Assembly (NCBI GenBank): GCA_001179505.1
Contig: CDMY01000273.1
Span: 62,001-126,000, forward strand
Direction: 5' to 3'
DNA length: 64,000 nt
Source: Vitrella brassicaformis CCMP3155
Lineage: Eukaryota > Protista > Chromerida
Shown: positions 59,892 through 64,000 of the stretch, piece by piece
Layout of the letters: every line of letters starts with the position of its first letter
How positions within the stretch are numbered: position 1 is the stretch's first letter
The notes under the pieces: model-generated
The model's database searches: none
The model's input: only the letters and a program-made list of their open reading frames with translations
What the model was told of the DNA's origin: nothing
Program-made: the position numbers and the translations under genes

Positions 59892-62800
59892 ATGGCGTGC
59901 GAGGTGCTGTCGATGATCGGCAGCTTCGACGAGCTCTCAGATGTACAGCCGGTGGTGAGCAAACACACAGCCCTGCTCGGGTTACAAAGATGGCTGCATG
60001 CGTGTGGGTGCGCATCTGCTGCGCTGTGTGTTGTGTGGGTGTCGATATTATGTCAGGGCGGCTGTCACTGTGGAGGCGTGCATCTGCCTATCGGTGCTGT
60101 GTCTTGCCATCATGACCACCATCCATCGGAGGAGCAGCGCAAGGAATGGGTACCGCGCCCAGACGCACACACACACACAAGGCACCCACACACACTCGAT
60201 AGATGCCCTTATCTGTGTGGCAGGGTCGTTTAAACGACGAGGGTCGCGTAGATTGGTGTTCGCGTGAGGGCAAGTGGAATGTGCACGCCGCCGCATCGAT
60301 GAACTACCAGGTCGCCATGAGCCCTACGCTGTTCGATGTCGACGACGGCACGTTCGCGAGCCACTACAGCAAAACAAAGAGGTGCGTATGAGCGGATGGG
60401 ATGGCTGGCGTGTCCTGTGTGAATGCGCTGGGTTGGGTGCGTGTTTATGGTCGCCTGTGCAGGTGTTTGGCGTTTGTGGATTCGTTTGTGTGGAGCGAGT
60501 ACGGCGACCGGCTGCGGACCTACTTCAACACGTACGAGATCAACGCCCACTTCGTGCCCATCAACATACCAGAGGAACAGAAAACTCTCGCGGTGAGTCC
60601 GCAGACCCACTCACACAAGTGGATAGATACACCACACACGGACGAATGGCTGCCCTNNNNNNNNNNNNNNNNNNNNNNNNNNNNNNNNNNNNNNNNNNNN
60701 NNNNNNNNNNNNNNNNNNNNNNNNNNNNNNNNNNNNNNNNNNNNNNNNNNNNNNNNNNNNNNNNNNNNNNNNNNNNNNNNNNNNNNNNNNNNNNNNNNNN
60801 NNNNNNNNNNNNNNNNNNNNNNNNNNNNNNNNNNNNNNNNNNNNNNNNNNNNNNNNNNNNNNNNNNNNNNNNNNNNNNNNNNNNNNNNNNNNNNNNNNNN
60901 NNNNNNNNNNNNNNNNNNNNNNNNNNNNNNNNNNNNNNNNNNNNNNNNNNNNNNNNCCGCACCGCATCGGGGGCTACCGCTTCCGCACCGACATCACCTT
61001 CGACGAGCTGGTCGACGTCTGCGGCGAGTACGCACGGGTGATGACTGTGCGGGTCGAGAAGCTCATCTGCGACGCGCCCGCGACGCTGCGGCTCCTGCCG
61101 CCCGTCACCGATAGCGATAGAAAGGAATGGGTGAGTGAGCTAACACAGACAGGCACAGAGAGAGTCGTGGGTCGTGTCTGGTGGCTCATTTATGTGGTGT
61201 TGTGTGTGTGTGTGTGTGGATGGGTGTGCAGAGGTTGAAGAACGACGACGGTCGTGTGGAATGGGAGGCGTGTTACGGCACCTGGTCGGTGGTGGCGAGC
61301 CAGCGCATGGACTACGAGGTCACCATGCGCCCGGGGCTGTTCGACCCGGCAGACGACGCACTCGCACAGTTCTACGCCAAAACCAAGAGGTGAATGACCG
61401 CCTCCACAGGCATCCACGGACGAGTGTGTGTGTGTGAGTGGATGTGTGTGTGTCTGGATGTGCAGGTGTCTAGCGTACGTTGACCCGTTGGTGTGGCAGG
61501 AGTATGGCCATCACATCAAGGCCTACTTCGAGGCGCACAACATCGCAGCTCGGTTCGTACCGTGCGCTGCACCGGAGGAGAACAAAAACCTTGAGGTACG
61601 CCTGAGATACAAACACACACAGAAGGCCCTTTGACACATTGTCCCATGTGTGTGCGCGTGTGTGTGTGTGTGTGTGTCAGTTGCTGGCTGCCGGTGCGCA
61701 AGCCATAGTCGATTTCGGTTTGGATCGTCGGCACGAGCCTGTCTTGGCCATCGGCGGCGGTGTGCTGATGGACGTGGTGAGTTTGCTGTCGTCTCTGTAC
61801 AAGCGCAGGGTGCCCTTCATCCGCATCCCCACCACTTTCCTCGGCATCGTCGACGCGTCCATCGGCGTCAAGACGGGCGTCAACTTCGGCAAAAACAAAA
61901 ACATGCTCGGCACCTACACGCCGCCCAAGGCCGTCTACATCGACACGGCCTTCCTCCGCACAGTTCCCGCACTCCACATCAGAAACGGACTCTGCGAGAT
62001 CATGAAAATGGCCCTCATGCGTGACAACGAGCTCTTCGCACTGCTGGAGGTACACGGGCGGCACATCCACGCACGGCTTGCCTGTGTTGACACATCCTTC
62101 TATCTGTGTGTATGTCCCGATATCTGTGTGTATGTCCCGCGTGCCTGTCTGGTTTAGGATTTTGGTGAGCGTTTGATCGAGACGCGTTTCGGGCACTACA
62201 CGGGCGGCGTGGGGGCGACGATGCCGGCTGCCGAGCTGTCGCAGGTGTGGGAGGCCGGCCAGGAGGTGATCCGCAGAGCCATCCACACGATGCTCGAGGA
62301 ACTCTCCTGCAACCTCACCGAACAAAACCTATACCGGTAAGCCAAACACAGACATTCGCAGAGCCAGCACACACAGCTGTACATAAAGCCTTCCGTTTGT
62401 CTGTGTGTGTGAATGTCAGTTGCGTTGATTTCGGTCACATCTGGGGCCCCGCTGTGGAGCTGGCGGCCTCCCCGCCCATCCCCCATGGGTTTGCGGTCAA
62501 CCAGGACATGGCCTACTGCGTGTACCTGAGCTACCGGGGCGGGTCGCTCACATGGGAGGAGGCGTGCCGCGTATGGCACTGCATGGACCGCCTGGGCCTG
62601 CCGCGCAGCCACACCTACTACCTCGACCCCTCCCTGATGCACCCCACGCTCATGAAGATGCAGAAGACCCAGGCCGGCATGCACAGGGTGCCCATCCCGC
62701 ACCGCATCGGGGGCTACCGCTTCCGCACCGACATCACCTTCGACGAGCTGGTCGACGTCTGCGGCGAGTACGCACGGGTGATGACTGTGCGGGTCGAGAA

Positions 62801-64000
62801 GCTCATCTGCGACGCGCCCGCGACGCTGCGGCTCCTGCCGCCCGTCACCGATAGCGATAGAAAGGAATGGGTGAGTGAGCTAACACAGACAGGCACAGAG
62901 AGAGTCGTGGGTCGTGTCTGGTGGCTCATTTATGTGGTGTTGTGTGTGTGTGTGTGTGGATGGGTGTGCAGAGGTTGAAGAACGACGACGGTCGTGTGGA
63001 ATGGGAGGCGTGTTACGGCACCTGGTCGGTGGTGGCGAGCCAGCGCATGGACTACGAGGTCACCATGCGCCCGGGGCTGTTCGACCCGGCAGACGACGCA
63101 CTCGCACAGTTCTACGCCAAAACCAAGAGGTGAATGACCGCCTCCACAGGCATCCACGGACGAGTGTGTGTGTGTGAGTGGATGTGTGTGTGTCTGGATG
63201 TGCAGGTGTCTAGCGTACGTTGACCCGTTGGTGTGGCAGGAGTATGGCCATCACATCAAGGCCTACTTCGAGGCGCACAACATCGCAGCTCGGTTCGTAC
63301 CGTGCGCTGCACCGGAGGAGAACAAAAACCTTGAGGTACGCCTGAGATACAAACACACACAGAAGGCCCTTTGACACATTGTCCCATGTGTGTGCGCGTG
63401 TGTGTGTGTGTGTGTGTCAGTTGCTGGCTGCCGGTGCGCAAGCCATAGTCGATTTCGGTTTGGATCGTCGGCACGAGCCCGTGTTGGCCATCGGCGGCGG
63501 TGTGCTGATGGACGTGGTGAGTTTGCTGTCGTCTCTGTACAAGCGCAGGGTGCCCTTCATCCGCATCCCCACCACTCTCCTCGGCATCGTCGACGCGTCC
63601 ATCGGCGTCAAGACGGGCGTCAACTTCGGCAAAAACAAAAACATGCTCGGCACCTACACGCCGCCCAAGGCCGTTTACATCGACACGGCCTTCCTCCGCA
63701 CAGTTCCCGCACTCCACATCAGAAACGGACTCTGCGAGATCATGAAAATGGCGCTGGTGAAGGACTACAAGCTCTTCACACTCCTCGAGGTCAGTCGAGC
63801 GACCTTAGCACCCCACAGCCCCCCATGTCCGCGCCGTTGTCAATTGTGCTGGTTGTGTTCTCTCAGGAGTTCGGTGAGTCGCTGATTGAGACGCGTTTCG
63901 GCCATCTGAGTCACGGCGACTACCGCTCGTCGGAGCTCAAGGATCTCCGCGAGGTGGGCCAGGAGGTGATCCGCAGAGCCATCCACACGATGCTCGAGGA
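59892..64000 (+). CDS. Multi-domain sedoheptulose-7-phosphate cyclase (EEVS-like, DHQS superfamily) polyprotein with at least 3 tandem cyclase domains; runs off the window
   Basis: Per unit: W.V.A...YEV..LFD, EENKNL, RRHEPVLAIGGGVLMD, RIPTT.LGIVDAS, KTGVNF..NKN.LG, NGLCEIMK, MLEEL..NL.E, VDFGH and HGFAV..DMA. Units are joined in phase at RKEW|RLKNDDG with no stop. Confidence 0.9.
60657..60956. other. Assembly gap (300 N) inside the cyclase array
   Basis: Run of N. The flanks are the N-terminal half of unit 1 and a C-terminal piece identical to that of unit 2. Confidence 1.
60957..64000 (+). repeat. Tandem repeat, period 1740 bp, of the cyclase unit including introns
   Basis: 60957-62012 matches 62697-63752 except 4 substitutions (61740/63480, 61743/63483, 61837/63577, 61935/63675). 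Confidence 0.95.

What the first reader, a model, noticed from the sequence alone, without database searches (positions are those of the whole stretch)
61741..62760. Hybrid or altered active-site fingerprint in the cyclase domain
Seen in unit 2: metal ligands are intact (E of GLCE, H of DFGH, H of PHGFAV), as is the NAD motif GGGVLMD. The EEVS-type Leu (MLEEL) and Asp (VDFGH) are present. The C-terminal motif reads KTQAG, where EEVS has KHRDG and DDGS has LTRDG, so it carries the DDGS-type Thr and has lost the conserved Arg-Asp. KNRLG has become KNMLG (DHQS-like) and HGEAV has become HGFAV. Reference motifs are recalled from memory of ValA and Ava_3858. Inference: shifted product or substrate specificity, or partly inactive scaffold domains.
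Basis: partly seen in the sequence, partly recalled or inferred. Interest (0 to 1): 0.7.

Follow-up and report, generated by a model that had tools for sequence, protein, structure and literature searches.

The report
Mixed-fingerprint sugar cyclase domain in chromerid
One repeat of an algal sunscreen-pathway gene encodes an intact, expressed sugar-phosphate cyclase whose active site matches one known enzyme class at two key residues and a sister class at a third, so its product cannot be read from sequence and would have to be assayed.

Summary
Every motif is at the stated place in unit 2 of a tandem cyclase array, and PDB alignments bear out the recalled ValA and Ava_3858 reference motifs.

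The region is five spliced exons (429 aa). They encode a complete NAD+/metal-dependent sedoheptulose-7-phosphate cyclase (SH7PC) domain inside a multi-cyclase plus O-methyltransferase gene of a probable Vitrella genome.

Of the three residues that published work uses to separate EEVS from DDGS, the domain has the EEVS Leu and Asp, the two tested by mutagenesis, and the DDGS Thr. No other of 390 homologues has this triple.

Most of the other flagged changes are ordinary:
- KNR→KNM, HGE→HGF and the lost Asp sit at positions that vary among EEVS-type proteins.
- The lost Arg is ~95% conserved, yet fish EEVS lack both the Arg and the Asp (KHSGG/QHSAG).

All 42 other strongly conserved positions but five are kept. 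Units 2 and 3 keep identical motifs under purifying selection (dN/dS ~0.3), and spliced transcript contigs exist. An inactive scaffold is therefore unlikely.

The domain is a deep, isolated lineage that leans EEVS but is not resolved. The product (EEV or DDG) is undetermined. I rate it a new variant of a known kind, of moderate interest.

Another note of this scan (s1-215951) covers this same stretch.

The parts
61232..61389 (+). Unit 2, exon 1: N-terminal strand region of the cyclase domain. It follows in frame on the last exon of the preceding unit.
   Evidence: AG acceptor and GT donor read. Weak ValA match. Identical to P0286:149-201.
61466..61595 (+). Unit 2, exon 2: the 'CLAYVD...EENKNLE' part of the NAD-binding domain.
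   Evidence: Splice sites. Aligns to profile columns 53-95. Present in P0286.
61681..62049 (+). Unit 2, exon 3: core of the NAD-binding domain. It holds GGGVLMD, VDASIGVKTG, KNMLG and the metal-ligand Glu of GLCE.
   Evidence: PF01761, 105 bits. ValA 149 bits against DDGS 107 bits. The donor at 62050 is confirmed by spliced contigs.
62158..62336 (+). Unit 2, exon 4: inter-domain helices with MLEEL (Leu267-type fingerprint residue) and the Asn of CNLTE.
   Evidence: Both junctions are confirmed by spliced contigs in X1, X2 and X6. Aligns to ValA MLEELQPNLWE. The best exon-level hits are DDGS-OMT fusion proteins P0088 and P0104.
62420..62870 (+). Unit 2, exon 5: C-terminal helical domain. It holds VDFGH (Asp281-type residue and metal His), GHIWGP, PHGFAV (metal His) and KTQAG (Thr at the His360/Thr347 site, Gln for Arg361).
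   Evidence: PF24621. ValA 57.7 bits against DDGS 56.2 bits. The acceptor is confirmed. Equals P0286:428-577.
62972..64000 (+). Unit 3, exons 1-3 and the start of exon 4; it runs off the window. Exon 5 lies at window-equivalent 64118-64520, followed by a linker and O-methyltransferase exons. Unit 3 carries the same fingerprint (KNMLG, MLEEL, VDFGH, HGFAV, KTQAG).
   Evidence: The E3|E4 joint is confirmed, and one 2187-nt contig links the tail of unit 3's exon 5 to the methyltransferase exons.
60203..60656 (+). Unit 1, diverged exons 1-2 only. The rest is lost in the 300-N assembly gap at 60657-60956, so its fingerprint cannot be read.
   Evidence: The gene model P0286 jumps from unit 1 exon 2 to unit 2 exon 1.

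Best explanation
Unit 2, like unit 3, is a folded, expressed and catalytically competent NAD+- and Zn2+/Co2+-dependent sedoheptulose-7-phosphate cyclase domain. It belongs to a deep, isolated eukaryotic lineage of the EEVS/DDGS radiation.

It sits in a multi-cyclase plus MysB-type O-methyltransferase fusion, which is the only EEVS/DDGS-type cyclase locus found in the assembled genome. It most likely supplies the cyclitol core of the alga's gadusol- or mycosporine-type sunscreen chemistry.

The fingerprint really is mixed. It is EEVS-type at the two sites supported by mutagenesis (Leu267, Asp281) and DDGS-type at the third site (Thr for His360). It also has a lineage-specific Gln for the usually conserved Arg361. 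The other flagged substitutions are ordinary family variation.

Inferred, not shown: the chemistry is EEVS-like, meaning oxidation, phosphate elimination, reduction and aldol closure to 2-epi-5-epi-valiolone or a close isomer. The fused methyltransferase, and probably a separate oxidoreductase, would act afterwards.
For: SH7PC identity:
- ValA scores 277 bits and Ava_3858 248 bits, against at most 113 for any DHQS.
- The AlphaFold2 model has pLDDT 91.6.
- Foldseek gives TM 0.85 and 0.81, rmsd 1.9, to 5tpr and 4p53.

Integrity:
- Of 48 columns conserved at 85% or more, unit 2 differs at 6, and only Arg361→Gln is a radical change.
- Metal, NAD and Lys/Asn positions are kept.

Selection: units 2 and 3 have dS ~0.65 and dN/dS 0.28-0.37 in their diverged half, with all motif blocks identical.

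Expression: GT..AG joints appear in three runs but not in a DNA run.

EEVS leaning:
- Leu and Asp are at the sites validated by mutagenesis.
- 6 of 9 class-discriminating columns are EEVS-type.
- The EEVS profile beats the DDGS profile by 80-92 bits.
- All 120 best database hits shown are EEVS-type or unnamed cyclases, at 36-44% identity.

The Arg-Asp is dispensable: fish EEVS read KHSGG or QHSAG.

Precedent for an EEVS-type cyclase fused to this methyltransferase family: P0014, which is followed by a short-chain dehydrogenase gene.
Against: - No enzyme assay exists, and the role of His360/Thr347 is not established by mutagenesis in what I could read.
- The fused methyltransferase belongs to the family that partners DDGS in mycosporine pathways.
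Both point to a 4-deoxygadusol route, which normally starts from DDG rather than EEV.
- Two class-discriminating residues (Trp, Thr) are DDGS-type.
- Exon 4 is most similar to DDGS-OMT fusion proteins.
- A sister position to DDGS is not rejected (AU p 0.26).
- The C-terminal domain is about 2 SD more diverged than expected from the N-terminal domain.
Confidence: 0.5

Rival explanations
1. The domains are functional DDGS (MysA equivalents) with a non-canonical active site. They would make desmethyl-4-deoxygadusol, which the fused MysB-type methyltransferase converts to 4-deoxygadusol for MysC- and MysE-type enzymes encoded elsewhere. Thr360, the Trp and the Arg361→Gln change would be part of an independent route to the extra dehydration steps.
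For: - The cyclase is fused to a Methyltransf_3 O-methyltransferase on one transcript contig.
- The only other cyclase-superfamily locus found in the assembled genome is DHQS-like, on C297.
- A colinear chain of ATP-grasp (NF005315) exons lies at C908:176145-178116.
- Thr and Trp are DDGS-type.
- A sister position to DDGS is not rejected.
- Foldseek ranks 5tpr first.
Against: - The domain lacks the Glu254 and Ala268 equivalents that mutagenesis shows to matter.
- It lies outside the DDGS crown clade, which has 100/94 support.
- Profile scores favour EEVS by 80-92 bits.
- Green algae show that MysC-type enzymes can also partner EEVS-type cyclases (PMC7826186).
Confidence: 0.3
2. The changed pocket (Met for the KNR Arg, Phe for the HGE Glu, Thr-Gln-Ala for His-Arg-Asp) shifts the substrate or the stereochemical outcome. 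The product would be a different cyclitol, such as 2-epi-valiolone or a product from another sugar phosphate.
For: - Loss of both Arg residues together is very rare: 2 of 210 homologues.
- The Leu/Asp/Thr triple, and Gln at position 361, occur in no other of 390 homologues.
- The C-terminal domain has diverged faster than expected.
Against: - Each single change occurs in proteins of the EEVS-type group, and fish EEVS lack the Arg-Asp.
- The residues that distinguish sedoheptulose-7-phosphate cyclases from DHQS (Met263, Asn270, Asp281, Pro288) are all kept.
Confidence: 0.13
3. Unit 2 is a catalytically dead scaffold or regulatory domain, and only one unit of the array is active.
For: - Repeated domains in one polypeptide often include degenerate copies.
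- Arg361 is lost.
Against: - Every metal, NAD and general acid/base position is intact.
- Units 2 and 3 carry the same fingerprint, so neither stands out as the degenerate copy.
- dN/dS is about 0.3.
- The model is confident.
Confidence: 0.05

Closest known systems
[quoted passage not shown]
   Same: - Same fold, with rmsd 1.9.
- Highest sequence score: 277 bits, 42% identity in the structural alignment.
- Shares the metal ligands, the NAD motif, Leu267, Asp281, Met263, Asn270 and Pro288.
- Like fish EEVS, it lacks the Arg-Asp after position 360.
   Different: - Thr instead of His360.
- Gln at position 361, Phe for the Glu of HGEAV, Trp for the Phe after the metal His, and Met for the Arg of KNRLG.
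- Not nested in the main EEVS clade.
- Present in at least three tandem copies fused to an O-methyltransferase.
[quoted passage not shown] 2006)
   Same: - Thr at the 347 site and Trp after the metal His.
- Partnered with a Methyltransf_3 O-methyltransferase, as a fusion like the dinoflagellate architecture.
- Best Foldseek E-value.
- Exon 4 is most similar to P0088 and P0104.
   Different: - Leu instead of Glu254, Asp instead of Ala268, and Phe instead of the His of HGHAV.
- Outside the DDGS crown clade.
- N-terminal domain identity is only 41-46%, against 56-61% to EEVS-type proteins.
P0014: uncharacterised EEVS-type cyclase fused to Methyltransf_3, followed by a short-chain dehydrogenase gene, on a metagenomic contig
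   Same: - Leu/Asp-type cyclase fused to the same methyltransferase family.
- Non-Glu residue in HGxAV.
- Its methyltransferase matches the Vitrella exons better than those of P0088 and P0104.
   Different: - Keeps His360 and Arg361.
- Has a single cyclase domain and an intron-free gene.
- Groups as sister to DDGS rather than with Vitrella.
3-dehydroquinate synthase (DHQS)
   Same: - Same superfamily fold, with TM about 0.72.
- KNMLG resembles KNL(I/A)G, and xAG after the Lys resembles KKxxAG or KKxxGG.
   Different: The DHQS-defining Lys250, Asn268, His275 and Lys356 equivalents are Met, Asp, Pro and Thr here. The sequence score is at most 113 bits, against 277 for ValA.

Membership tests
Sugar phosphate cyclase superfamily (DHQS-like fold) | Two-domain fold, GGGxxxD NAD motif and Glu/His/His metal ligands | tested here: met
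   PF01761 and PF24621 hits. Invariant columns are kept. The AlphaFold2 model has pLDDT 91.6 and matches 5tpr, 4p53 and DHQS structures.
Sedoheptulose-7-phosphate cyclases (EEVS plus DDGS) | Met263, Asn270, Pro288 and Asp or Ala at 281, in place of DHQS Lys, Asp, His and Asn. Much higher similarity to ValA and Ava_3858 than to DHQS. | tested here: met
   Columns, with the DHQS-like P0137 and 6lk2 for contrast. Scores are 277 and 248 bits against at most 113.
EEVS | Leu267 and Asp281, the sites supported by mutagenesis | tested here: met
   MLEEL and VDFGH align to ValA. The literature basis is PMC10666671.
EEVS | His360 | tested here: not met
   Thr in both units. Of 373 aligned homologues with Asp or Ala at position 281, 339 have His; no Asp281 homologue has Thr.
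EEVS | Placement inside the EEVS clade | tested here: inconclusive
   The Vitrella pair branches outside the main EEVS clade (92/91) on a long stem. Profile scores lean EEVS.
EEVS | Makes 2-epi-5-epi-valiolone from SH7P | not testable with these tools
   Needs an enzyme assay.
DDGS / MysA | Glu254 and Ala268 | tested here: not met
   Leu and Asp are at these columns.
DDGS / MysA | Thr347 | tested here: met
   KTQAG aligns to LTRDG. The column is Thr in 18 of 21 DDGS-type representatives.
DDGS / MysA | Placement inside the DDGS clade | tested here: not met
   The DDGS crown clade (100/94) excludes it. A sister position is not rejected (AU p 0.26).
DDGS / MysA | Partnered with a MysB-type O-methyltransferase | tested here: met
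   Methyltransf_3 exons lie downstream in the same gene model and on the same transcript contig.
DHQS | Lys250, Asn268, His275 and Lys356 equivalents (Aspergillus nidulans numbering, recalled from memory) | tested here: not met
   Met, Asp, Pro and Thr are at the aligned columns, compared with the DHQS-like P0137 and 6lk2.
EVS (2-epi-valiolone synthase) and DEIS/EboD | Clade membership with characterised members | not tested
   No characterised EVS or DEIS sequence was on hand. TIGR04425 scores below aroB on both exons.

The most novel reading that the evidence does not exclude
The Vitrella cyclases would be a natural intermediate between EEVS and DDGS. They would feed a MysB-type methyltransferase and a MysC/MysE mycosporine pathway from an active site that keeps the EEVS Leu and Asp. 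That would mean either an independent origin of DDG-forming chemistry or a new EEV-to-sunscreen route. In either case the Thr360/Gln361/Trp/Phe set would be the specificity switch.
Probability: 0.3. Interest if true: 0.7.

Novelty: new variant of a known kind. Interest (0 to 1): 0.5.

Why it matters
What decides whether a sedoheptulose-7-phosphate cyclase stops at 2-epi-5-epi-valiolone or goes on to desmethyl-4-deoxygadusol rests on three residues, and only two of them have mutational support.

This is a naturally selected enzyme with the EEVS pair plus the DDGS third residue. It is wired to a DDGS-type downstream methyltransferase, so it offers a ready-made test of that model.

It would also define the entry step of sunscreen biosynthesis in chromerids, the photosynthetic relatives of apicomplexan parasites.

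If it turns out to be a plain EEVS, it still widens the accepted sequence range for annotating these often mislabelled enzymes.

Tried and rejected
Papers not held. The primary fingerprint papers could not be read: Kean 2014 (PMC4095911), Asamizu 2012 (PMC3405187), Osborn 2017 (PMC5400686) and the 2017 review (PMC5553865). The three-residue fingerprint is therefore taken from the review PMC10666671. The full 14-site list was not available. The structural role of Arg361 and of the KNR Arg is unknown to me, and my idea that they help bind the phosphate is speculation.

Joined spliced model. Later the database's own gene model P0286, found by the listing of cluster members, gave the same protein under a reference. 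That reference was used for the full-domain searches, the tree and the fold.

MysC search. Two fungal ATP-grasp neighbours of DDGS, used as queries on the window's own genome, found nothing. Only the family model NF005315 found a below-cut-off exon chain.

Trees. The 'quick' N-domain tree proved unreliable, because a constrained tree scored 45.7 log-likelihood units better. It was replaced by careful trees. One AU test, Vitrella with the P0088-type fusions on the C-domain, did not finish.

False leads. Regex hits suggesting other sequences with 'LTNAG' or 'LTRAG' were misplaced matches.

Unit-to-unit junction. The exon 5 to exon 1 splice (62870→62972) was not seen in contigs, because the repeat breaks them. 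A single polyprotein transcript across the units therefore rests on the in-frame splice sites and the gene model only.

Structure limits. The tools return no coordinates, so no residue contacts could be measured.
Full report
**What is there**

The window is G000:C273:62001-126000 of a 72.7-Mb, 1064-contig, ~58% GC, intron-bearing genome. Its size and contig count fit Vitrella brassicaformis as I remember it, and an earlier follow-up note names Vitrella. I did not verify the taxon.

No long ORF covers the finding. The region is one unit of a 1740-bp tandem repeat.

Each unit has five short exons with GT..AG introns rich in (TG)n. Unit 2 is:
- E1 61232-61389
- E2 61466-61595
- E3 61681-62049
- E4 62158-62336
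- E5 62420-62870

Together these make 1287 nt, or 429 codons.

Exon 5 ends in phase 0 and the next unit's exon 1 starts in phase 0, so the units can be read as one polypeptide.

Unit 1 has only diverged exons 1-2 before a 300-N gap (60657-60956).

Unit 3 runs off the window. Downstream it is followed by a Ser/Ala/Pro-rich linker and caffeoyl-CoA-type (Methyltransf_3) O-methyltransferase exons.

Later, the listing of cluster members returned the database's own 1482-aa model of this locus, P0286, which sits on a contig of the same 140,566 bases as C273. P0286:149-577 is identical to my unit 2 model. I used that reference for the whole-domain work.

**Is it expressed and spliced?**

Contigs of runs X1, X2 and X6 show GT..AG joints exactly at unit 2 E3|E4 and E4|E5, at unit 3 E3|E4 and at three methyltransferase introns. 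The genomic run X3 shows none of them.

One 2187-nt contig links the tail of unit 3's exon 5 to the methyltransferase exons.

The unit-to-unit junction was not observed, because the repeat breaks the contigs.

**The observation**

The recalled references are right:

| Protein | Motifs |
|---|---|
| ValA | KNRLG, MLEEL, VDFGH, HGEAV, KHRDG |
| Ava_3858 | KNRLG, MLELE, IAYGH, HGHAV, LTRDG |
| Vitrella unit 2 | KNMLG, MLEEL, VDFGH, HGFAV, KTQAG |

With a tag offset of 6 in 4p53 and 34 in 5tpr, my residue counts reproduce the published numbers: Asp281, His360, Ala268 and Thr347.

**What the fingerprint means**

The primary papers are not held. The review PMC10666671 states that His360, Asp281 and Leu267 of EEVS are replaced by Thr347, Ala268 and Glu254 in DDGS. 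It adds that mutagenesis supports the Asp/Ala and Leu/Glu sites. The Vitrella units therefore carry the EEVS residue at both validated sites and the DDGS residue at the third.

I aligned 269 homologues, later 390, to a profile. The counts below are from 100 diverse EEVS-type representatives, from 18 DDGS-type representatives for the class-specific rows, and from all 390 homologues for the last two rows.

| Position | EEVS-type representatives | DDGS-type | Vitrella |
|---|---|---|---|
| KNR | R49 L8 K7 I3 M1 | not determined | M |
| HGE | E82 Q5 F4 L3 | H, 17 of 18 | F |
| 359 | freely variable | not determined | K |
| Asp362 | G35 D33 N21 A8 | not determined | A |
| Arg361 | 95% R | R, 18 of 18 | Q |
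| Arg361, all 390 | R351 S18 H2 W1 A1, never Q | included in the 390 | Q |
| Leu/Asp/Thr triple, all 390 | absent | absent | both units |

Loss of both Arg residues together occurs in 2 of 210 homologues.

[quoted passage not shown] They read KHSGG, or QHSAG in Danionella, and have KNK at the other Arg site. [quoted passage not shown] Arg361 and Asp362 are therefore neither fingerprint sites nor needed for EEVS activity.

An unbiased scan of 48 columns conserved at 85% or more finds six differences in unit 2:
- G→S
- A→L
- R→K
- L→F (unit 2 only)
- S→G
- Arg361→Gln

Only the last is a radical change.

Of nine columns that separate EEVS-type from DDGS-type representatives, Vitrella is EEVS-like at six. 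It is DDGS-like at two, namely the Trp two residues after the metal His and Thr360. It matches neither at one, the Phe of HGFAV.

**Is it functional?**

Units 2 and 3 are almost identical over the first ~1055 nt, introns included, and then diverge. In the diverged half, dS is 0.62-0.68 and dN/dS is 0.28-0.37. The motif blocks (EVIRRAIHTMLEEL, VDFGHIWGP, PHGFAVN, HPTLMKMQKTQAGMHRVP) are unchanged.

The AlphaFold2 model of unit 2 has mean pLDDT 91.6. It superposes on 5tpr (TM 0.85) and 4p53 (TM 0.81) at rmsd 1.9, and on DHQS structures at TM ~0.72.

An inactive scaffold is therefore unlikely.

**Where it belongs**

- Whole-domain phmmer gives ValA 277 bits, Ava_3858 248 bits, DHQS at most 113 and DOIS 85.
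- The best of 5.8 billion clustered proteins reach only 36-44% identity. All that carry a name are EEVS or sedoheptulose-7-phosphate cyclases.
- A search of 1.84 billion representatives with exon 5 found only a fragment of unit 3 above 41% identity.
- The N-terminal domain is 56-61% identical to EEVS-type proteins and 41-46% identical to DDGS-type. The C-terminal domain is about 34% identical, some 2 SD below expectation.
- Exon 4 is most similar to DDGS-OMT fusion proteins P0088 and P0104, which have the architecture reported for dinoflagellates.
- In a careful 45-taxon, 378-column tree the two units form a clade (100/99) on a long stem. That clade lies outside the DDGS crown (100/94) and outside the main EEVS clade (92/91).
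- In the same tree a Leu/Asp/His clade, P0014/P0017/P0096, is sister to DDGS.
- The AU test does not reject Vitrella as sister to DDGS (p 0.26).
- The EEVS profile beats the DDGS profile by 80-92 bits for Vitrella. Typical EEVS-type proteins show +116 to +182, and DDGS-type show -132 to +24.

The verdict is a deep, isolated, EEVS-leaning lineage.

**Context and likely function**

The only other cyclase-superfamily locus in the assembled genome is DHQS-like, on C297.

A colinear chain of ATP-grasp (NF005315) exons lies on C908. It scores below the family cut-off, so it is only partial support for a MysC gene. Earlier notes of this scan report MysC- and MysE-like genes. I treat those notes as leads.

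This context suggests the array supplies a mycosporine- or gadusol-type pathway. Canonical logic (DDGS, then MysB, then MysC) favours DDG. The validated fingerprint sites favour EEV.

Two precedents make an EEV route plausible:
- Green algae pair EEVS with MysC homologues for gadusol-core mycosporines (PMC7826186).
- The uncharacterised P0014 fuses an EEVS-type cyclase to the same methyltransferase family, next to a short-chain dehydrogenase.

I put the odds at EEV-like product 0.5, DDG 0.3, another product or substrate 0.13, and inactive 0.05.

**Novelty**

I found no paper that links Vitrella to this gene. The kind of enzyme is known. The residue combination, the lineage and the architecture are new variants. 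Only an assay can settle the product.

Noticed in passing
window 60203-64000, continuing to C273:128500 (L004): The gene is a tandem multi-cyclase plus O-methyltransferase fusion. The public gene model P0286 (1482 aa) jumps the 300-N gap from unit 1 exon 2 straight to unit 2 exon 1. The true number of units and unit 1's active site are therefore unknown.
   Followed up: partly
window 60957-62012 versus 62697-63752: Two stretches of ~1055 nt, introns included, are almost identical (4 mismatches). The 3' halves of units 2 and 3 differ by dS ~0.65. This points to recent gene conversion, a partial duplication or a collapsed assembly.
   Followed up: partly
window 62883 (L004:5883): A contig of run X1 matches from inside the inter-unit intron onward, but is preceded by 141 unrelated letters. 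It may come from another unit variant, such as one hidden in the gap, or from an alternative upstream exon.
   Followed up: no
L004:8024, 8286 and 8719 (C273:127024-127719): Transcript contigs leave the methyltransferase exons for similar but different sequence, for example one reading DADKVGYTV where the locus reads DADIQKYGVYF. This suggests a paralogous O-methyltransferase transcript, or an exon that the assembly has wrong.
   Followed up: no
L004:7730 (C273:126730): Genomic run X3 carries a 12-nt insertion, GAGATGGTGGGT, in a GEMVGEMVGEMV-type repeat just after the linker. This is a length polymorphism of a short tandem repeat.
   Followed up: no
L010:115-2895: A metagenomic contig encodes an intron-free EEVS-type (Leu/Asp/His) cyclase fused to Methyltransf_3. 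A short-chain dehydrogenase gene follows 4 nt later. This is a candidate compact gadusol-like operon.
   Followed up: partly
P0014, P0017 and P0096 in the tree: A clade of Leu/Asp/His proteins with Trp after the metal His, and F, H or L in HGxAV, groups as sister to the DDGS clade (94/83). It may be the 'equidistant' clade that the literature reports as authentic EEVS.
   Followed up: no
G000:C908:176145-178116: A colinear chain of four exons matches the ATP-grasp family NF005315 (positions 10-370) below its cut-off. This is consistent with the MysC-type gene noted elsewhere in this scan.
   Followed up: partly
G000:C297:11737-11980 (- strand): This is the only other DHQ_synthase-domain locus in the assembly, presumably the shikimate-pathway enzyme. 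One TAA lies inside the second match, probably an intron.
   Followed up: no
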